NCBI RefSeq assembly: GCF_006345805.1
Contig: NW_021827037.1
Location: 1-11,313, forward strand
Direction of reading: 5' to 3'
DNA from: Octopus sinensis
Lineage: Eukaryota
DNA: 11,313 bases
A program made the position numbers and the translations under genes. Numbering within the stretch: position 1 is the first letter of the stretch; each line of letters starts with the position of its first letter. The notes beneath the pieces were generated by a model, which did not search any database, was not told where the DNA came from, and worked only from the letters and a program-made list of their open reading frames with translations. Shown piece by piece: positions 1 through 11,313 of this stretch.

Positions 1-140
1 GATGTTCGTTGCTCATCTTCTGTCACTGATTTTACCAGAATCAGTGAAGACCACAGTCCTCGCCACCCTGCCCTTCCGAAAAATGATTCTTATATCAACC
101 CTTTAAGTTTGAGAATCAAAAGAATTCAGCTAGGATTAAT

Positions 141-174
141 CTTGGTTTCTTATTTGAACATTCTACGCTTTTAG
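141..174 (+). other. Candidate 3' splice acceptor opening the large propeller exon
   Basis: Pyrimidine-rich tract ending TTTTAG|GTGTAG. Propeller-like coding begins directly downstream and the upstream frames contain stops. Confidence 0.35.
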
Positions 175-3100
175 GTGTAGAAATGTTTGGTCAGACCATA
201 TCGTCATTGACTGGGAAGAGAATAGAATAAAATACGAATTCATAATGAAAGAAACCCCTTCAGATATTGCTGTAGGAGCACAAAATAAACTCTTAGTATC
301 CTTTTCCAATATTAACAGGGTTACCTGTACAATGTGGATGGTCAGCAGTTATTTGAGGTGGGTGGATACAAATTCCCTGGACATTCCAAGCCACATCTCT
401 GTGTACCAAACCATTTTTATGTCCTTCAGGACATATTATTTATCGGATATCAGGTACAGGTGCTGTGACAACAAGAGGAATTGGCATGCATGAATGCCGC
501 CATATTTCTGTGGCAAAGAAAACATTTTTGTAACTGATTATTTTGATGTCCTTCATACATTGGAACAAATGAAGACTTTTGGCCCAGGCAGTCACATAAC
601 CCCCAGCTATGGACCCCAACATTGAACAACTATATTTATATTGAGGATTGCTACAACATTACAAATATTCTACCTATGTCTACATCTTCTATATTAATAA
701 TTTACAAAAACAGAAAGCTAAATTATTCACTGATAACGGGAAATAATTAACCAAAATAATTCAGTTTTCTTGAGCTTCCTCTTTCTGTTGTAGAATAAAC
801 GCAAACAGATTCCTGGTATTTTATTGTGAATTGAAAGGATTTCAGTATATCACCTGTCCTGAACTAAGAAAAGGCCCTTTAATAAAGGTGCAACTGGTTA
901 CATGAAAATATGTCATATTGTATCAAATAAGTGTCTGGCTGTGACCACCACTGAAAATAAAAGCGAGGTCCATATCTTATTGATCAACGAGATAAAGTTG
1001 ACATTGCAGAAAGAATTTCTCTGGGACATCATAATGTCAGCATTGCTGCAACTCCAATTAATTTTGTAGTCGTAGATGGAAACGAAAATAAAATGGTATT
1101 ATTCCACATGTGGTGAAGAACTTTTTCAAAAATACCTTCCATTCTATGGCTACCCTCATCACATCTACTCTGATAATGTTTATTTCTATGTCCTCTTCAG
1201 GAGACACTCTATTCTCAGATGTTACGATCTATATGGAGAAATGAAATGGCAGTGGGAACTGCCTTCCCTGTCACCCTCACATTGCTGTTTCCAAGGAACT
1301 CTTTATGTCCCGGACACTCAACTCAACAGGGTTCTTCTTTACAAGTATCAAGACTGGTCGTCTGGCTGTCGTTACCCATTAAAATCCTTATATCAGAAAT
1401 CTAAATCTACGACTGAAAGAAAAGGAGAATGACCAAAAACTTGTCATTGGCGAAATATGTAATCTGTCCAATGGACAGTTGGTGGTGTCTGACATCAACC
1501 ATGATTGCTTGTTGTACATTTTGAGGAAGGAGACATTGTGTCCAGATTATCTCTGCCGTCTACAGCCACAGATATATGTCGAGGATTCTAATCATATAGG
1601 GGTCACATTACCCCTACAGAAACAATTAAGGGTCATCGGAAACCTATCAAAGACAGTGAGAAGTGTAAAATTAAGGCAGCCTTATGTACAGGTGTGTAAG
1701 ATGGGTGAATGTGAAATTGTTTGTTATTGTGATAAACCATCACATTTAGACATTTTAGCCATCAATAATGATAATCAAGTTGAAGTAATTAAGACAATTA
1801 ATATCCCTGTGTTTGTGAAATCATTATCAGTAGACAAGGAAACAGAAAAGCTATTAATTGTTACTAGGGGAAAAGCTTTTCAGTACAACACTAGAATAGG
1901 TGGTGGTGGTCATGGCGTTTGTCAGATGGTCCCCAGTGTTTTAATGTCCCAAGTGAAACGTCCCCTCAGTCTCCAAGGTGGATCTATTGACCAAACGTCT
2001 GTTTATCTGATAGACAGAAGCCGTATGTTTGCCATAAACGATCAGAATTTGTTGGTTAATGATCTCGTTACTAATAATCAACTTAATTATTATATCGACC
2101 TGGTGGATGTATTTTCCAGACACATTTCTCTCAGTGAAATGTTGTCTTCCACTTTATATCTACAGGACCTGACAGTTTCTGATAAAGCCAGGCATATTCC
2201 TCTCCCTAAACATTTGGGAGACAAAGGACCAGCGGAGATTAGATCTTTGGTTCTTACTGAAAATAATCTGATTGCAGGATGTGACAGGGAGAATGGAAAC
2301 ATTAAGATATTCACATTGGATGGTCACCTATTGGATTCAATCAAAGTGAATGTTCATTATGATATTAAAATGTGTCGATGGCAGTCAAACACACTGGTCA
2401 TTACGACTAGGGATCGTTTTAATAAATCCCAACTGTGGACATTAAAAGTGGAATTTCCATTGTCGTTGGTAATTTACCAAACGAGAAATAATTATAAATG
2501 TGTGGCTTCTTTATCAAATAATCAACTGGTTTTGAGTGAATCGGGAGATGAAAGACATTTGCATTTTGTTGATATTGATGAAATACATTCGAGTGTGAAG
2601 GAAATAAATAAAATAGACATACCTGAACCATTAATATGGAGACACGAAGTTGGAGATTATTCTGATATAATCCAGGATTAAAGTTACTGATGAAGATGTC
2701 ATCATTGTCTTCAACGAAAGATTCATCATCTTCTTCAACAGTGGTGGTCAATATTTACATTCAGTCAGACACTACATGCAGTATTATTTTGGTGATGACA
2801 GGATGACAATTGATGACAGTTTTTTGTACATTTATGGTTATTGGGAGAAATATTTACGTTCATCAGGATATGGAAACATTTTGTGTTTGACCCAGAATGG
2901 GGAATACGAGAGAATATTTTTAAATGAAAGAATTTATAAAGATGAAGTAGAATTCTCCAGTATAGACTGTAAAGGACCAAGGTTTATTGGAAGCCCCAGG
3001 AGGGAAGAAAGGAATGAATGTATGTTGAAGGGGTTTATGGTGAATCGAGACAGCTTCCCGGTTGCTCGTTTACAACAGACGAATGTCCTGTTCAAGTAAA

Positions 3101-3533
3101 AGATTTTGATGTCTCTGAGGAAGGAAAGACATTGCGTGTGAAAAAGCCAATAATGGAAATGTTAAAATATTCGATGAAGACGGCCAGTTGCTATGTCACA
3201 GAAATGTTGCAAGTTTAGTTGGTGGTGTGTGTTTTACACAAGAATCACACATAATGGCCACGGTTCCTAAAAGAAAGAAATACTTCAACTGAATGGAGAA
3301 GATTTGCAGACATCTCAAGTTTGGTCGGGTCTCATCCCTTATGGTGTAATATGGAGAAAAGTGGCGGGTATTTACTGGTGTGTACATAATGAATTGATTG
3401 AATGTCATTGCATAAAGATTGATGGGGACCAAGTGAACATTCTGGAATCTGTGTCGTTATTAATCTTGATTCTGGTCTTCGTTTCCCTTCCATTACATCT
3501 GAAACGAACAAGGAAATATTCAGTAAGGATTAA
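175..3533 (+). pseudogene. Frameshift-interrupted long reading frame (~1,100 aa when repaired) of tandem beta-propeller (NHL-like) modules; pseudogene or intact gene with assembly indels
   Basis: ORF-track fragments 245-493, 1076-1432, 1479-2681, 2776-3099, 3018-3218 and 3304-3537 join into one propeller-like peptide when 1-2 nt gaps are filled, e.g. TPSDIAVGAQNKLLVSF, HPHIAVFQGTLYVPDTQLNRV, IGEICNLSNGQLVVSDINHD, VKDFDVSEEGK. From 1145 onward most repairs are guided by the paralog at 9238-11313. Repairs upstream of 1145 are my own reconstruction and less certain. The family call rests on blade-like patterns only, with no HMM search. Confidence 0.7.
1383..2681 (+). CDS. Largest open segment of the propeller gene (400 aa ORF from TTG at 1479; frame open from 1383)
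   Basis: Frame 3 is open from 1383 (NPYIRNLNLRLKEKENDQKLVIGEICNLSNGQ) to TAA 2679-2681. It is an internal fragment and not an independent gene: homology to the paralog continues on both sides. Confidence 0.65.
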   Translation, partial: NPYIRNLNLRLKEKENDQKLVIGEICNLSNGQLVVSDINHDCLLYILRKETLCPDYLCRLQPQIYVEDSNHIGVTLPLQKQLRVIGNLSKTVRSVKLRQPYVQVCKMGECEIVCYCDKPSHLDILAINNDNQVEVIKTINIPVFVKSLSVDKETEKLLIVTRGKAFQYNTRIGGGGHGVCQMVPSVLMSQVKRPLSLQGGSIDQTSVYLIDRSRMFAINDQNLLVNDLVTNNQLNYYIDLVDVFSRHISLSEMLSSTLYLQDLTVSDKARHIPLPKHLGDKGPAEIRSLVLTENNLIAGCDRENGNIKIFTLDGHLLDSIKVNVHYDIKMCRWQSNTLVITTRDRFNKSQLWTLKVEFPLSLVIYQTRNNYKCVASLSNNQLVLSESGDERHLHFVDIDEIHSSVKEINKIDIPEPLIWRHEVGDYSDIIQD

Positions 3534-3560
3534 TTAATAAATTGGAATACAGAGGAGGAG

Positions 3561-4721
3561 ATGGAGATGGAGGAGGAAGAAGAGAGAGGTAAATCAGGTG
3601 AAATAATTGGTAAAGGTAGATTAAAGGTGAGATGTGGTAATTACATAGCAGAGATTAATAATTCAGGAATTGATGAAATATCAGTGAGGAGACTTCCATA
3701 TAGGACAGCAATGGTCCCTTTTTCCATTCCTGCATTTGAGGAACCTGTTGATTATGATTTGTGGGACATTAGGGACCGGAACAGTAAACTAATTAAGTTA
3801 GATGAGAATGTGAGTGTGTTGATGTTTCGAGAAAGTGTCACATTAATCAGAACAACAACAACAACAACAGTGGACATACTTCAACATGAACAACAACAAC
3901 GACCACCACTGGACATATGTCGGTGGACAGAGGAATGTTTCATTGTCGCCTTTGGGAGAGAAATGAGGGTCTTCGATAGGGATCTCCGTCGTTTAAAAAC
4001 CATCAGAACTGAGAAATACTACAACAGGATTTATAAATACAACGACAATCAACTCGTGTGTGGTGGTCACGATATTAGAGACATAACTCAAGAAGAGAGA
4101 CACAAGAAATACAAAAGTAAATGGAGAAACAACAAGGATTACTATATTTGCGATGACCCCAGCATCTTTGACCCTTATTATGTGGATGTGGTTGATATCA
4201 AAGATGGGAAATGTAAAGATGAAGTGCGTCGTGAGAAGATGAGGAGATTGGGAAGGTTGGAGGGAGATGAAGGGGTGGTGGATGGTGTGGGAGTCACATC
4301 TTTTGGTGATGTTGTTGTTTTGGGGAAGCAGATAAAGAAGGAGTTTGGAATTTGGGGAGTTTATTGTTTTGTGGAATGGTTCAGGGAAAAGTCTTTGGTG
4401 AGGAGGATAAGAATAGAAGAAAGAATATTTTCTTTTCTGGGAGAATATATTCAAAGACCTCGTCTGACCATAATTGGTGAATGTGTTTATATAACAGATT
4501 TAAATAACAATATTTACGAAATACCTCGACATATTGAAGAGGAAACATCTGAAGATGATGAAATCCTGAGATTAAAAGATAATCCAAAATATTTACTCCT
4601 CAGAGGGGATGATAATGAAGTCTTTGAAGTTCTTGGTTTGGATGTTTCAGACAATTCTTTGATGGTTTTTGGAATTATTCCTGGACGTCAATCTTTTGCT
4701 TTCTTTTATTTTGACAAATAA
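3561..4721 (+). CDS. 386 aa protein with acidic N-terminus and one beta-propeller-like module
   Basis: Uninterrupted ATG-to-TAA ORF. It contains DICRWTEECFIVAFG, RIYKYNDNQLVCGG, DGVGVTSFGDVVVLG, RPRLTIIGECVYITD and VLGLDVSDNSLMVFG blade-like segments. The DICRW motif is shared with upstream modules. Confidence 0.7.
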   Translation: MEMEEEEERGKSGEIIGKGRLKVRCGNYIAEINNSGIDEISVRRLPYRTAMVPFSIPAFEEPVDYDLWDIRDRNSKLIKLDENVSVLMFRESVTLIRTTTTTTVDILQHEQQQRPPLDICRWTEECFIVAFGREMRVFDRDLRRLKTIRTEKYYNRIYKYNDNQLVCGGHDIRDITQEERHKKYKSKWRNNKDYYICDDPSIFDPYYVDVVDIKDGKCKDEVRREKMRRLGRLEGDEGVVDGVGVTSFGDVVVLGKQIKKEFGIWGVYCFVEWFREKSLVRRIRIEERIFSFLGEYIQRPRLTIIGECVYITDLNNNIYEIPRHIEEETSEDDEILRLKDNPKYLLLRGDDNEVFEVLGLDVSDNSLMVFGIIPGRQSFAFFYFDK

Positions 4722-5105: not shown

Positions 5106-5367
5106 CACCGCCGCTGTCTCCGCCGTCATCATCGTCATCGTCTCCGCCGTCGTCGTCGTGGTGGTCGTCGTCGTCTCCGCCGCAGTCGTCGTCGTCGTGG
5201 TCGTCGTCGTGGCCGTCGTCGTCGTCTCCGCCGTCGTGGTCGTGGTCGTCATCATCATCATCATCATCACCATCACCATCATCATCATCATCATCGTCGT
5301 CGTCATCACACATCATCGTCATCATCATCATCATCGTCGTCATCATCATCAATCATCAGCATCGTCG

Positions 5368-5402
<35 letters not shown>

Positions 5403-5430
5403 GTCGTCATCATCATCATCGTCGTCATCA
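5106..5430. repeat. Compound (TCG)n/(TCA)n trinucleotide microsatellite
   Basis: Direct reading. It generates the poly-S/D/T/H/M ORFs in the track. Confidence 0.95.
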
Positions 5431-7634: not shown

Positions 7635-7635
<1 letters not shown>

Positions 7636-7636
7636 G

Positions 7637-7686
7637 CCATTTGACTGCGGCCATGCTGGAGCACCGCCTTTAATCGAGCAACTCGA
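7637..7686 (-). mobile_element. 3'-end fragment of the same SINE family
   Basis: CCATTTGACTGCGGCCATGCTGGAGCACCGCCTTTAATCGAGCAACTCGA is the near reverse complement of 8391-8440. Confidence 0.85.
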
Positions 7687-7688
7687 TG

Positions 7689-7703
7689 CACACACTCACA
7701 CAT

Positions 7704-7775
<72 letters not shown>
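7689..7775. repeat. (CA)n followed by (TA)n
   Basis: Direct reading; left flank of the foldback element. Confidence 0.95.
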
Positions 7776-7783
<8 letters not shown>

Positions 7784-8004
7784 TTAAGGGTAGAAATTGA
7801 TATTTATCAATTAAGACTAGTGGTCTAGCATATTAAAAAGAATCTGAAGATTAAAATATTTATATTACCAATTGAGGACTGAACACGAAAAGTGGACAGT
7901 CAACCTCAATGGTATATATAAAATATTTTAATCTTCGGATTCTTTTTAATATGCTAGACCACTGGTCTAATTGATAAATATCAATTCTACCCTTAATTAA
8001 TATT
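7776..8004. mobile_element. Foldback / MITE-like palindromic element within (TA)n
   Basis: About 110 bp arms: 7776-7886 pairs with 7892-8004 with a few mismatches and 1-nt gaps, around a GAAAA loop at 7887-7891. Termini are AATATTAATTAAGGG...CCCTTAATTAATATT. No coding capacity. The inverted repeat is certain; the MITE label is inference. Confidence 0.75.
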
Positions 8005-8039
8005 ATATATATAATATAATATATATTATATAGGTGTTG

Positions 8040-8070
<31 letters not shown>

Positions 8071-8071
8071 T
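8005..8071. repeat. TA-rich tract followed by (TG)n
   Basis: Direct reading; right flank of the foldback element. Confidence 0.95.
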
Positions 8072-8072
8072 A

Positions 8073-8463
8073 GGCGCAGGAGTGGCTTGTGGTAAGTAGC
8101 TTGTTTACCAACCACATGGTTCCGGGTCAGTTCCACTGCGTAGCATCTTGGGCAAGTGTTTCTACTATAGCCTCGGGCCACCAAAGCCCTGTGAGTGGAT
8201 TTGTTTGATGGAAACTGAAAGAAGCCCGTCGTATATATGTATATATATATATATGAGTGTGTGTCTGTGTTTGTCCTCCTAGCATTGTTTGACAACCGAT
8301 GCTGGTGTGTTTACGTCCCCGTCACTTAGCGGTTCAGCAAAAAGAGACCGATAGAATAAGTATTGGTCTCACAAAGAATAAGTTCCGGGGTCGATTTGCT
8401 CAACTAAAGGCAGTGCTCCAGCATGGCCACAGTCAAATGACTGAAACAAGTAAAAGAAAAGAA
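8073..8463 (+). mobile_element. tRNA-derived SINE, near full length (common Octopus family)
   Basis: tRNA-like head with A-box-like TGGCTTGTGG (8083-8092) and B-box-like GGGTCAGTTCC (8124-8134), then CTTGGGCAAGT, an internal TA/TG tract and a 3' end GCTCCAGCATGGCCACAGTCAAATGACTGAAACAAGTAAAAGAAAAG. Family recognised from memory, not by database search. Confidence 0.85.
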
Positions 8464-8493
8464 TATATATATTATGATTTTTGAAGAAACATA

Positions 8494-9072
8494 ATGGAAC
8501 AGAGTGAGAAATTAAAGGAACTGATTTTTCCTGAAGAAAAAGGGAGACAGAAATTGTCACATGACTGTGATGTCTGTAAAAAGTCCTTCTCTCAAAAGGC
8601 TTACTTAAATAAGCACAAACGTATTCATACGGGAGAGAAACCATTTCACTGCGACATTTGTGGTAAATCATTCTTTCAGAAAGGTAGCTTGACGTCACAC
8701 AAACGTCTTCATAAAGGAGAGAAGACTTATCACTGTAATGTCTGTGGTACATCATTCTCTGACCAAAGTATTTTAACTACTCACATACGTGTTCATACAG
8801 GGGAGAAGCCATATCACTGCAACATCTGTGGCAAGTCTTTCTCTAAAAGTATTACCTTAACTAAACACAAATGTATTCATACAGGGCAGAAACCATTTGA
8901 CTGTGACATCTGTGGTAAATCATTCTCTCGAAATTATAACTTGACTGTACACAAACGTATTCATACTGGGGAGAAGCCTTGTCACTGTGATGTCTGTGGT
9001 AAATCATTCTGCCAAAGTGACAGCTTAGCTACTCACAAACGTTTCCATATAGGAGTGAAGCCATATGACTGA
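8494..9072 (+). CDS. C2H2 (Kruppel-type) zinc-finger protein with 6 complete tandem fingers before TGA
   Basis: Six C-x2-C-x3-F-x5-L-x2-H-x3-H repeats at 28 aa period with TGEKP-type linkers. Large C2H2-ZNF expansions are established in Octopus. Confidence 0.93.
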
Positions 9073-9237
9073 TATATGTGGTGAATCATTTCCTATAAGT
9101 ACTTATTAGTCACTGACATATCTATACAGGAGAAACCAGATCGTTGTGGAGTCTGTGGTAAATCATTCTCTTCAGCCAGTCTCTTCACTACACACAAACG
9201 TATTCATACAGGGAAGAATCCATTCCACTGTGATGTT
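9064..9237 (+). pseudogene. Continuation of the ZNF array: broken finger 7, intact finger 8, start of finger 9
   Basis: 9064-9138 is a finger shortened to 75 nt from 84. 9139-9222 reads DRCGVCGKSFSSASLFTTHKRIHTGKNP and 9223-9237 reads FHCDV, both in the same frame as the 8494 ORF. Confidence 0.85.
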
Positions 9238-11313
9238 TATGGCTACCCTCTTCACATCTACTCTGATAATGTTTATTTCTATGTCCTCTTCAGGAGACAC
9301 TCTATTCTCATATGTTACGATCTATATGGAGAAATGAAATGGCAGTGGGAACTGCCTTTCCCTGTTCACCCTCACATTGCTGTTTTCCAAGGAACTCTTT
9401 ATGTCCCGGACACTCAACTCAACAGGGTTCTTCTTTACAAGTATCAAGACCGGTCGTCTGGCTGTTGTTTACCCATTAAAAATCCTTATATCAGAAAACT
9501 AAATCTACGACTCAAGAAAGGAGAATGACCAAAAAATTGTCATTGGCGAATATGTAATCTGTCCAATGGACAGTTGGTGGTGTCCGACATCAAGCATGAT
9601 TGCTTGTTGTACATTTCTGAGGAAGGAGACATTGTGTCCAGATTATCTCTGCCGTCTACAGCCACAGATATATGTTAGTGGGGTTCTAATCATATAGGGG
9701 TCACAAGATGATCTCCAGTGTTTTACTGTCCCAAATGAAACCTCCCCACAATTTCTATGGTGGATGTATAGATAAAAATATTTATCTGTTAGACAACATC
9801 CCTATGTTTGTTATAAATGATTACTATTTGGTGGTTAAGGATCTCGTTACAAATAATCAGCTTAATATTGACATGGCACATCTATTTTATAGAAACATCT
9901 GTGTAAGTGAAATGTTGTCTTCTAAATTCTATCTACAGGATCTCCAGGTTTCCGAGACAAACAACCAGTGCAGATTTTTCGTTTGGTTATTACTGAAAAC
10001 AACCTGATTGCAATATACGACAGGAAAAATAAAACACATTAAGAAATTCACATTTGATGGTCATCTCTTGGATTCTATCAAACTGAATGTCTCTGCCATC
10101 AATATGTGTCGATGGCAGTCAAACCCACTGGTTATTACAACTGGTGATGGTGACAACCAAATGTTGACATTAAAAGTTCAATTTCAATTGTCATTGGTGA
10201 TTTAGCAGACAAAAAATAAATATCATTGTATTGCTTGTTTGTCGGATGGTCTACTAGTATATAATTGGGATGGAGATGAACGTACTTTGTATGTCATTGA
10301 TTTTGATGAAATCCATTCGACTGTGAGTATAATGAAGCAAATAGACATACCCGAGACATTATTGATGAGAGGTGGTGAGGTTATTGATTATGTTGAAGGC
10401 ATATGAAATATTACAGTGACTGTTAATGATGTCATCCTCATTAGCAACAACAAATTCATCAATTTCCTCAGTAGTGGTGGTCAGTATTTACATTCAGTTA
10501 GACACTACATGAAGTATATCAGTATTCATAGCAACATAACAGTTGATGAGAAAAGATATCATCTCTATGGTATATTTAACAACATAGTGTGTTTCACACA
10601 GACTGGTGACCACAGCAAAATATATTTAAATGAAAGAATTTGTGTATGTAAAGTGGGCTTTAGCTGTATAAACAGTAAAGGACCGAGATATATTGGAAGA
10701 CACTGAAATAAATTGTATGTTGAAGGTTTGTTTCAGCTTAATCGGGAGAGATTCCCTGTTTGTCGTTTACAAACAGACGACTGTCCTGTTCAAGTAAAAG
10801 ATTTTGATGTCTCTGAGGAAGGAAAGACAGACGTGTGTGAAAAAGCCAATAATGGAAATGTTAAAATACTTGATAGAGATGGGGAGTTGCTATGTCATAG
10901 AGATGTTGGAAGTTTAGTTGGTGGTGTGTGTTTTACAGGAGAAAGAGGGATAATGGTCACACTTCCAAACAGATGAGAAATATTTCACTGAAGGAACAAG
11001 ATTTGGAGAAATATAAAGTTTGGTCAAGTCTCATCCCTTATGGTGTAATATGGAGAAAAGTGGCAGGTATTTACTGATGTATACATATTGAATTGATTGA
11101 ATGTCATTGCATAAAGATTGATGGGGACCAAGTGAACATTCTGGAATCTGTGTCATTATTAAATCTTGATTCTGGTCTTCGTTTCCCTTCCATTATATCT
11201 GAAACGAACAAGGAAATATTCAGTAATGAATAAATAAAGGTAGATTAGAGGTGAGATGTGGTAATTACATAGCGGAAAGTAAGTCAGCAGCTGATGAAAT
11301 AGCAGAAGATTTC
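9238..11313 (+). pseudogene. Decayed, 5'-truncated paralog of the propeller gene; runs off the window end
   Basis: Aligns to 1145-1607 (9238-9705) and to 1924-~3680 (9706-11313). It has in-frame stops at 9676, 10203, 10404, 10704, 10974 and 11075, frameshifts and internal deletions. Confidence 0.88.

What the first reader, a model, noticed from the sequence alone, without database searches (positions are those of the whole stretch)
9139..9528. In-frame chimera: C2H2 zinc-finger array fused to beta-propeller sequence
Seen: frame 1 is open from 9085 to 9528 and reads ...KRIHTGKNP-FHCDV|YGYPLHIYSDNVYFYVLFRRHS...LYVPDTQLNRVLLYKYQD...KKGE*. The ORF track shows only the part from ATG 9334. From 9238 the DNA matches 1145 onward at about 97% ignoring gaps. 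The junction sits at a microhomology: the other fingers read TGTGG where the propeller reads TATGG, and both parents carry CCATTC (Pro-Phe) just upstream. No intron or repeat lies at the join. Inference: microhomology-mediated recombination or template switching between two expanded gene families made a new architecture (up to 8 fingers plus ~97 aa, about two blades and a linker; ~347 aa if finger 7 is intact). It is not a complete propeller, and a misassembly is a real alternative.
Basis: partly seen in the sequence, partly recalled or inferred. Interest (0 to 1): 0.72.

Follow-up and report, generated by a model that had tools for sequence, protein, structure and literature searches.

The report
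Real but decaying zinc-finger/propeller gene fusion
In common octopus genomes, a broken zinc-finger gene is joined to a 468-base piece of a neighbouring octopus-only gene; the join is real and shared by two species, but it looks like a decaying rearrangement scar, not a working new protein.

Summary
The window is the whole 11,313-bp unplaced contig VCDQ01009858.1 of Octopus sinensis. After zinc finger 8 and four codons of a ninth finger (HCDV), the sequence switches in frame at 9237/9238 into a 468-bp fragment (9238-9705). That fragment is ~96-97% identical to 1145-1607 of an octopus-specific, propeller-like gene.

Misassembly is essentially excluded. The same junction occurs in a second O. 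sinensis contig. It is base-for-base identical in the O. vulgaris chromosome assembly (OX597841.1, ~6.93 Mb), so it predates the species split.

A "new ZNF-propeller architecture" is not supported:
- Finger 7 carries shared in-frame TGA stops.
- The fragment ends at a shared premature TAG (9676), 27 nt before a second breakpoint (9705/9706).
- Beyond that breakpoint lies the remnant of a much older (~75% identical) paralogue.
- Between-species divergence is a uniform ~0.6-0.9% across finger array, fragment and flanking pseudogene.
- Coding changes are 6 nonsynonymous to 1 synonymous.

An O. vulgaris gene model (CAI9742764.1, 366 aa) does cross the junction. It needs a 90-nt intron that removes a zinc-binding histidine.

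The window's earlier stop (9526) comes from contig-private 1-2-nt deletions, probably consensus errors.

Verdict: a real, conserved two-breakpoint rearrangement scar of modest interest.

The parts
1..4721 (+). Copy 1: an intronless member of an octopus-specific, propeller-like gene family. It is cut by the contig start, and in this contig it is broken into several frames.
   Evidence: [quoted passage not shown] It has 26 private 1-nt deletions against 0-9 in the relatives.
1145..1607 (+). The segment of copy 1 that matches the fragment at the junction (donor-type sequence).
8071..8475 (+). SINE-like interspersed repeat just upstream of the zinc-finger gene. It is not the orthologous copy of the one in O. 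vulgaris.
   Evidence: Many copies at 72-91% identity in L001-L003 and L005. It differs from L007 by 8.9% substitutions, against under 1% from 8476 onward.
8494..9072 (+). Zinc-finger ORF: a 24-aa leader plus six intact C2H2 fingers (8566-9048), ending at a TGA inside finger 7.
   Evidence: The same 192-aa ORF is present in O. vulgaris.
9049..9144 (+). Degenerate finger 7. It has in-frame TGA at 9070 and 9082, and both histidine positions are lost. This contig also has private deletions of 1 nt (9104) and 2 nt (9129).
   Evidence: The stops are shared with L006 and L007.
9145..9207 (+). Finger 8, which is intact (CGVCGKSFSSASLFTTHKRIH).
9208..9237 (+). Linker TGKNPF plus the first four codons (HCDV) of a ninth finger. 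This is the last zinc-finger sequence before breakpoint J1.
9238..9705 (+). A-fragment: 468 bp of a copy-1-type gene (family residues YGYP...HIGVT), fused in frame.
   Evidence: It differs by 3.4-4.7% substitutions from five copy-1-type genes and by about 15% from the paralogue L003. It is identical at J1 in O. vulgaris.
9526..9528 (+). It is caused by a 2-nt deletion at 9515. A further private 1-nt deletion lies at 9548.
9676..9678 (+). Premature TAG shared with O. vulgaris. It is part of a cluster of fragment-derived changes (CGA TGG GAT to TAG TGG GGT) 20-27 nt before breakpoint J2.
9706..11313 (+). Remnant of an old paralogue. It starts exactly at the family's second module (AG ATG...) and is only about 75% identical to copy 1 (1924-3537). 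It is broken into short ORFs and cut by the contig end.
   Evidence: The same broken ORFs are present in O. vulgaris.

Best explanation
The junction is a genuine, evolutionarily fixed rearrangement scar in a gene cluster of the Octopus vulgaris/sinensis lineage. It is not an assembly error, and most likely not a working domain fusion.

The structure has three pieces:
1. A C2H2 zinc-finger gene broken inside its ninth finger.
2. At J1 (9237/9238), a 468-bp internal piece of a neighbouring, octopus-specific propeller-like gene.
3. At J2 (9705/9706), the start of the second module of a much older, already decayed paralogue.

Inferred origin: the most economical explanation is one error-prone repair event with two template switches. 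It would have copied 468 bp from a copy-1-type gene lying some 10 kb upstream in the same orientation. Two successive deletions in a tandem array would give the same product.

Shown:
- Both breakpoints have at most 2-3 contiguous shared bases.
- Both breakpoints, the broken finger 7, the premature TAG before J2 and the shattered downstream module are identical or shared between O. sinensis and O. vulgaris. They therefore predate the split of the two species, put at 2.5 My ago in PMC10700109.

Present state: at most, the first six fingers (192-aa ORF) could still be made, with the junction lying behind their stop codon. The ZNF-propeller reading frame itself is not maintained as a protein. The window's short ORF end at 9526 is a peculiarity of this low-quality contig.
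For: Source and second copy:
- The window is the complete contig VCDQ01009858.1.
- The same J1 is in contig VCDQ01005947.1, with 13 substitutions and 3 indels over 887 bp and a different structure upstream. That means a different molecule or copy.

Conservation in O. vulgaris:
- O. vulgaris OX597841.1 matches window 8071-11309 in one 97.5% blast alignment, but only 8476-11309 is orthologous (under 1% substitutions).
- J1, J2, the finger-7 TGAs and the TAG at 9676 are all conserved there.
- Substitution divergence is uniform: ZNF 0.94%, fragment 0.64%, old module 0.81%.
- Changes inside the putative coding sequence are 6 nonsynonymous to 1 synonymous (my reading).

Mosaic structure:
- The fragment is 3.4-4.7% from copy-1-type genes, while the sequence after J2 is about 25% from them. 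The 316 bp between (1608-1923) are missing.
- No remnant of the propeller gene's 5' part lies upstream of the fingers.
- Fragment-derived substitutions cluster next to J2.

The O. vulgaris gene model: it needs a 90-nt GT-AG intron that removes finger 6's last histidine.

Contig quality:
- Four window-private deletions lie in the junction region.
- There is a three-fold excess of private 1-nt deletions in copy 1.
Against: - An annotated 366-aa protein in O. vulgaris (CAI9742764.1) crosses J1 in frame. That annotation pipeline used RNA-seq and Iso-Seq among its inputs (PMC10700109), so transcription and even splicing around finger 7 may be real.
- With under 1% divergence there is little power to detect selection.
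- The ATG and the six-finger ORF are kept in both species.
- In O. vulgaris the frame across J1 stays open for about 190 codons.
- The single-event template-switch origin is only inferred. Microhomology at both joins is short and interrupted.
- The one fragment-derived change near J1 (H to L, 14 nt in) is absent from the L006 copy, so it arose later.
Confidence: 0.72

Rival explanations
1. A young, functional chimeric gene. Here the locus makes a seven-finger DNA-binding protein with a ~146-aa beta-strand tail taken from the propeller-like family. Expression would use a 90-nt intron that skips the broken finger 7, as annotated in O. vulgaris.
For: - Gene model CAI9742764.1/P0138 (366 aa) crosses the junction, with a canonical GT-AG intron.
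- Pfam finds 7 zf-C2H2 stretches in it.
- The junction is in frame.
- The ATG and the ORFs on both sides are conserved between species.
Against: - The intron removes the second zinc-ligand histidine of finger 6. This is typical of a predictor stepping around stop codons.
- In the window the same splice would be out of frame because of the 2-nt gap at 9129.
- The L006 copy has a 1-nt deletion 30 nt after the junction.
- Changes are 6 nonsynonymous to 1 synonymous, and divergence equals that of the adjacent pseudogene.
- The tail starts mid-blade, ends at a premature stop and cannot close a propeller.
- No paper mentions the locus.
Confidence: 0.12
2. The fragment is a gene-conversion tract. An old tandem paralogue would have had part of its first module overwritten by a copy-1-type gene. 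Separate later deletions then removed its 5' part up to the zinc fingers and the 316 bp after the tract.
For: - The fragment and the old module are collinear with copy 1 (1145-1607, then 1924 onward).
- The family shows mosaic patterns of similarity among copies.
Against: - Both ends of the supposed tract coincide exactly with rearrangement breakpoints, so no old-paralogue sequence flanks it on either side.
- This needs three independent events where one or two suffice.
Confidence: 0.12
3. Assembly or library artefact: a chimeric long read or a graph misjoin created the junction.
For: - The window is a short unplaced contig with an excess of 1-nt deletions.
- It has a fold-back structure at 7635-8442.
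- Its left part is joined differently from related contigs and from O. vulgaris.
Against: - The junction is present in three sequences from two species, and the O. vulgaris assembly was made independently (its authors describe ONT reads, PMC10700109).
- There is no shared repeat at the join that could mislead an assembler.
Confidence: 0.02

Closest known systems
Octopus C2H2 zinc-finger gene expansion (tandem clusters of multi-finger genes; my own knowledge of Albertin et al. 2015, not re-read here)
   Same: - 84-bp finger repeats with TGEKP-type linkers and a short leader.
- Pfam zf-C2H2 well above cut-off.
- 60% identical to O. sinensis 'ZNF239-like' P0036, which also breaks off inside a finger into unrelated sequence.
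   Different: This copy has a dead seventh finger. It is cut in its ninth finger by a foreign gene fragment.
DNA-level chimeric genes and chimeric pseudogenes made by ectopic or non-homologous joining of neighbouring genes (for example Drosophila jingwei-type fusions or primate TRIM5-CypA; my own knowledge)
   Same: Parts of two unrelated genes are joined in frame, are lineage-specific, and are fixed in more than one species.
   Different: - No evidence of expression or selection.
- No retroposition hallmarks.
- The donated part is an incomplete domain ending in a premature stop.
Replicative template-switch rearrangements (FoSTeS/MMBIR; my own knowledge of Lee-Carvalho-Lupski 2007 and Hastings 2009)
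   Same: - Two breakpoints 468 bp apart.
- A short templated insert copied from a nearby gene in the same orientation.
- Only 1-3 nt of homology at each join.
- A cluster of point changes beside one join.
   Different: The event is ancient, so the parental alleles are unknown. Two simple deletions cannot be excluded.
NHL / six-bladed-type beta-propeller proteins (for example the Lin41 filamin-NHL domains, PDB 6fpt)
   Same: - The family is all-beta with four-strand blade periodicity.
- All of the 50 best Foldseek matches listed are propeller proteins.
- Weak hits to NHL (18.5 bits), SGL (E 0.22) and designed propellers (E 0.002).
   Different: - No Pfam model reaches its cut-off.
- The structural model is of low confidence (pLDDT 43, TM at most 0.47).
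- Full-length members are 1,500-1,900 aa orphans seen only in octopus data.

Membership tests
C2H2 zinc-finger protein (Pfam PF00096/PF13465) | CX2CX12HX3H units joined by TGEKP-like linkers, scoring above Pfam's gathering cut-off | tested here: met
   - Seven regex-perfect fingers: 8566-9048 (six) and 9145-9207.
- PF00096 scores 110 bits against a cut-off of 25.2, and PF13465 scores 144 bits against 40.
C2H2 zinc-finger protein (intact gene) | An uninterrupted array in one reading frame | tested here: not met
   Finger 7 has TGA at 9070 and 9082 and has lost both histidines. The stops are shared with L006 and O. vulgaris.
Beta-propeller (NHL / SGL / WD40-type) | A match to a curated repeat or domain model above its cut-off | tested here: not met
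   - SGL: E 0.22, 11.5 bits against a cut-off of 26.3.
- NHL: 18.5 bits against 20 in one full-length relative; no hit in the other four, except DUF4934 at 17.1 bits against 27 in P0129.
- Precomputed Pfam is '-' for all eight octopus homologues.
Beta-propeller (NHL / SGL / WD40-type) | A predicted fold of four-stranded blades arranged in a ring | tested here: inconclusive
   - The AlphaFold2 model of P0006 has mean pLDDT 42.9. Only residues ~230-340 reach 62-83; these are all-beta with blade-like strand spacing.
- All 50 Foldseek PDB hits listed are propellers at E 1e-9 to 1e-7, but TM is at most 0.47.
- An HMM search of the PDB hits designed propellers at E 0.0023.
Beta-propeller (as part of the chimera) | Enough blades to close a ring | tested here: not met
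   - Only 97 aa follow the join before the window's private stop, or 146 aa before the shared stop. Full-length family proteins are 1,500-1,900 aa.
- The piece starts inside a blade.
Functional chimeric (fusion) gene | One open reading frame from a start codon across the junction | tested here: not met
   - In the window there is no in-frame ATG between the stop at 9082 and 9334.
- In O. vulgaris it is achieved only through a predicted 90-nt intron that deletes a zinc ligand.
Functional chimeric (fusion) gene | Purifying selection on the fused frame | tested here: inconclusive
   - 6 nonsynonymous to 1 synonymous changes.
- 0.6-0.9% divergence, equal to the flanking pseudogene.
- There are too few changes for a firm test.
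Functional chimeric (fusion) gene | Transcript spanning the junction | not testable with these tools
   No read data are accessible. No paper mentions LOC118768538 or CAI9742764.
Template-switch (FoSTeS/MMBIR-type) complex rearrangement | Two or more breakpoints with microhomology and a short templated insert from nearby sequence | tested here: inconclusive
   - J1 and J2 lie 468 bp apart, with a donor-type gene upstream in the same orientation.
- Contiguous homology is at most 3 nt at J1 (T.TGG) and about 2 nt at J2.
- There is a nearby 7-nt TCCATTC match (1.1% of positions, post hoc) and a mutation cluster beside J2.
- The parental alleles are unknown.
Assembly chimera | A junction confined to one contig or assembly | tested here: not met
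   The junction is present in VCDQ01009858.1, VCDQ01005947.1 and O. vulgaris OX597841.1.

The most novel reading that the evidence does not exclude
The locus is a young protein-coding gene of the O. vulgaris species complex, older than the 2.5 My species split. Its product would be a seven-finger C2H2 protein whose C-terminus is a ~146-aa beta-strand module taken from an orphan, hypervariable propeller-like family. It would be expressed through the 90-nt intron around the dead finger. That would be a dated, two-breakpoint example of domain shuffling between two lineage-specific octopus gene families.
Probability: 0.1. Interest if true: 0.5.

Novelty: new member of a known kind. Interest (0 to 1): 0.25.

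Why it matters
If the fused frame were expressed, it would be a cleanly dated case of new gene architecture arising by non-homologous joining inside the fast-evolving octopus zinc-finger clusters. Both breakpoints and a donor-type gene are preserved.

As the evidence stands, the practical value is more modest:
- It shows how such clusters shed and splice gene fragments.
- It flags two questionable annotations. One is the O. vulgaris 366-aa model with a stop-skipping intron. The other is the O. sinensis 'ZNF431-like' model, which stitches three pseudogene pieces together.
- It documents that this unplaced contig carries many single-base deletions that create false frameshifts.

Tried and rejected
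- Exact look-ups of the window's 192-aa ZNF ORF and its 64-aa ORF found no record.
- A homology search with the 147-aa chimeric ORF returned nothing. The word index missed even obvious relatives, so one capped search was wasted.
- The ZNF homology search was swamped by vertebrate and insect zinc fingers. Its one useful hit identified the contig.
- Rfam found no RNA family in the window, so the SINE-like repeat could not be named.
- A protein-level search for remnants of the propeller gene's 5' part between 4700 and 9240 found none. This rejects 'zinc-finger gene inserted into an intact paralogue'.
- I first suspected a fold-back or chimeric-read artefact, because of the palindrome at 7635-8442 and the short contig. 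I rejected this for J1 and J2 once the O. vulgaris orthologue was found. It remains open only for how the left 8.4 kb is attached.
- Structure prediction with a 9-sequence alignment gave a poor model. It serves only as class-level support.
- Literature searches for the locus identifiers found nothing.
- Simple internal periodicity of copy 1 was an artefact of reading two loci from one file. I corrected this.

Full report
**What the window is.** The window is identical to the whole 11,313-bp unplaced contig VCDQ01009858.1 of the Octopus sinensis assembly GCA_006345805.1. It holds four things:
- 1-4721: an intronless member ("copy 1") of a gene family found only in octopus data.
- About 4.7-8.5 kb: a spacer rich in microsatellites and repeats.
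- 8494-9237: a C2H2 zinc-finger array.
- 9238-11313: sequence related to copy 1 again.

**Check of the observation.**
- Frame 1 has stops at 9070, 9082 and 9526. It is therefore open from 9085 to 9528 and reads ...HTGKNPFHCDV|YGYPLHIYSDNVYFYV...KKGE*. Its only ATG is at 9334.
- 9238-9705 aligns to 1145-1607 with 14 mismatches and 9 gap openings in 471 columns.
- The homology ends abruptly at TATGG. Copy 1 reads CCTTCCATTC|TATGG and the window reads AATCCATTCCACTGTGATGTT|TATGG. The other fingers read TGTGG at that place.
- A 7-nt match (TCCATTC) this close to a breakpoint is reached at only 1.1% of positions along copy 1. This is a post hoc test, so it is suggestive only.
- The 84-bp finger repeat ends at 9233, and no interspersed repeat touches the join.

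**Is it real?** Yes.
- A second O. sinensis contig (VCDQ01005947.1, locus L006) carries the same join. It differs by 13 substitutions and 3 small indels over 887 bp. Its structure upstream is also different, since it lacks window 7857-8537. It therefore comes from another molecule or gene copy.
- A profile search of 1.84 billion representative proteins returned P0138. This is O. vulgaris CAI9742764.1, and its sequence runs ...NPFHCDV|YGYPLHIYSDN....
- Its locus (L007; OX597841.1 at about 6.93 Mb) matches window 8071-11309 in one 97.5% blast alignment. Orthology holds only from 8476 on (under 1% substitutions); the SINE before it is a different copy. L007 is base-identical from 9130 to 9421, which covers the junction.
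- The O. vulgaris genome was assembled independently; its authors describe ONT reads. They date the split from O. sinensis at 2.5 My ago (PMC10700109).
- No shared repeat at the join could mislead an assembler.
- Misassembly is therefore excluded for practical purposes, and the junction is older than the species split.

The fragment is bounded by a second breakpoint.
- At 9705/9706 the copy-1-like sequence (...GGGGTCACA) jumps to AGATGATCTCC.... This is the start of the family's second module and corresponds to copy-1 position 1924. The 316 bp between (1608-1923) are missing.
- Left of this point, the fragment differs from five copy-1-type genes of both species by 3.4-4.7%.
- Right of it, identity to every known family member drops to about 75% in DNA and 50-69% in protein. 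The frame is shattered into short ORFs, and the same short ORFs occur in O. vulgaris.
- No trace of the propeller gene's 5' part lies upstream of the fingers.
- The locus is therefore a three-part mosaic: a zinc-finger gene cut in finger 9, then a 468-bp young fragment, then an old dead paralogue.

**Coding state.** The fused frame does not look maintained.
- Finger 7 is dead in all three copies. It has in-frame TGA codons and has lost its histidines.
- The fragment ends at a TAG (9676) shared with O. vulgaris. This stop belongs to a tight cluster of fragment-derived changes (CGA TGG GAT to TAG TGG GGT) 20-27 nt before the second breakpoint.
It follows a 2-nt deletion at 9515, and a further private 1-nt deletion lies at 9548, both in runs of A. 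Two more private deletions lie at 9104 and 9129, where L006 and O. vulgaris agree with each other.
- Copy 1 in this contig has 26 private 1-nt deletions, against 0-9 in four relatives, while its private substitutions are comparable or fewer (47 against 49-172). This points to uncorrected long-read consensus errors.
- The O. vulgaris model reaches 366 aa only through a 90-nt GT-AG intron, equivalent to window 9041-9129. That intron steps over finger 7 and removes the last zinc-binding histidine of finger 6. In the window that splice would be out of frame.
- The L006 copy has a 1-nt deletion 30 nt after the join.
- Between the two species, substitution divergence is 0.94% in the fingers, 0.64% in the fragment and 0.81% in the dead module. 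Inside the putative coding sequence the changes are 6 nonsynonymous to 1 synonymous. This is what neutrality predicts, but the numbers are small.

**Is the partner a beta-propeller?** Probably, at the level of fold class.
- No Pfam model reaches its cut-off: SGL has E 0.22, and NHL scores 18.5 bits against a cut-off of 20 in one relative.
- A PDB profile search gives only weak hits to designed propellers (E 0.0023).
- An AlphaFold2 model of the O. bimaculoides member is poor overall (pLDDT 43). It is all-beta with four-strand periodicity in its best part, residues about 230-340, which covers the start of the segment found at the junction.
- All of the 50 best Foldseek matches listed are propeller proteins, though TM is at most 0.47.
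- The family is small, with 22 representatives. Full-length members are 1,500-1,900 aa.
- The 97-146 aa in the chimera start inside a blade and cannot form a closed propeller.

**How it most likely arose (inferred).** I favour one error-prone repair event with two template switches.
- A break in the ninth finger would have been repaired by copying 468 nt from a copy-1-type gene.
- Such a gene lies a few kb upstream in this contig. By collinearity it lies roughly 10-13 kb upstream in L001 and O. vulgaris.
- Repair then switched again to the head of the second module of the old paralogue downstream.
- Features that fit this: two breakpoints close together, 1-3 nt of homology at each, the same orientation, and a mutation cluster beside J2.
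- Two successive deletions, or conversion plus deletions, give the same product and cannot be excluded. A species with only one of the two joins would decide.

**Comparison and verdict.** This resembles known DNA-level chimeric genes and pseudogenes, and template-switch rearrangements. It sits in the octopus zinc-finger clusters, which are well known for turnover. It is a new example of a known kind.
- The chimera and the non-homologous join are supported.
- Misassembly is refuted.
- The "new architecture" reading is not supported by the sequence, although an annotated model exists and transcription remains untested.

Interest is modest (0.25). It would rise to about 0.5 if junction-spanning, correctly spliced transcripts were found.

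Noticed in passing
window 3963-4427, 8680-8958, 9941-10039: The NCBI gene model on this contig (P0103, 'zinc finger protein 431-like', 271 aa) is itself a three-exon chimera. It joins the C-terminal ORF of copy 1, fingers 2-5 and a piece of the dead paralogue. It splices over the junction at 9238, so it is probably an annotation artefact.
   Followed up: partly
window 7635-8442 (centre ~7891): A nested inverted duplication (fold-back) that includes a SINE-like repeat and a CA/TA microsatellite. Related sequences differ here: L006 lacks 7857-8537, apparently deleted between CTGAAGAttAAAA and CTGAAGAAAAA, while L001 and O. vulgaris carry 7-9.5 kb more. The way the left 8.4 kb of this contig is attached to the zinc-finger locus is therefore either a structural variant or an assembly problem.
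   Followed up: partly
window 8071-8475: A SINE-like interspersed repeat of about 400 bp, with many copies (72-91% identical) in every octopus locus fetched. It has no Rfam match. It sits immediately upstream of the zinc-finger start codon, both here and in O. vulgaris.
   Followed up: partly
window 2251-3000 and 4001-4500 (copy 1); L002 13425-14006: These are hypervariable patches in the propeller-like family. All pairs of copies differ by 6-10% here, against 1.4-3.4% elsewhere. Between two O. vulgaris paralogues, one 71-codon stretch has 21 nonsynonymous and 0 synonymous differences. This hints at diversifying selection in an orphan multi-copy gene.
   Followed up: partly
window 1-4721: Copy 1 changes frame at least five times relative to the O. 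vulgaris ORFs of 514 and 791 aa. The contig has 26 private 1-nt deletions against 0-9 in the relatives. Most of the frameshifts are therefore probably consensus errors and not pseudogenisation.
   Followed up: partly
O. vulgaris OX597841.1 at ~3.14, 6.04, 6.93 and 8.71 Mb (L003, L002, L007, L005): Several family copies lie on one chromosome. The flanks at 6.93 and 8.71 Mb are 97.6% identical over 2.1 kb, which indicates recent segmental duplication of the whole gene-plus-spacer unit.
   Followed up: no
window 8581-9071: The finger array contains a 252-bp (three-finger) internal duplication at 81% identity. Fingers 1-3 and 4-6 therefore arose by duplication of a block.
   Followed up: no
window 5124-5430: Long CGT and TCA triplet arrays just after copy 1 create spurious Asp/Ser/His-rich ORFs on both strands.
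   Followed up: no
P0036 (O. sinensis ZNF239-like): The closest annotated octopus zinc-finger relative also breaks off inside a finger (…CRICGS|IWLGETL…) and runs into unrelated sequence. Truncated finger arrays that read into foreign DNA may be common in these clusters.
   Followed up: no
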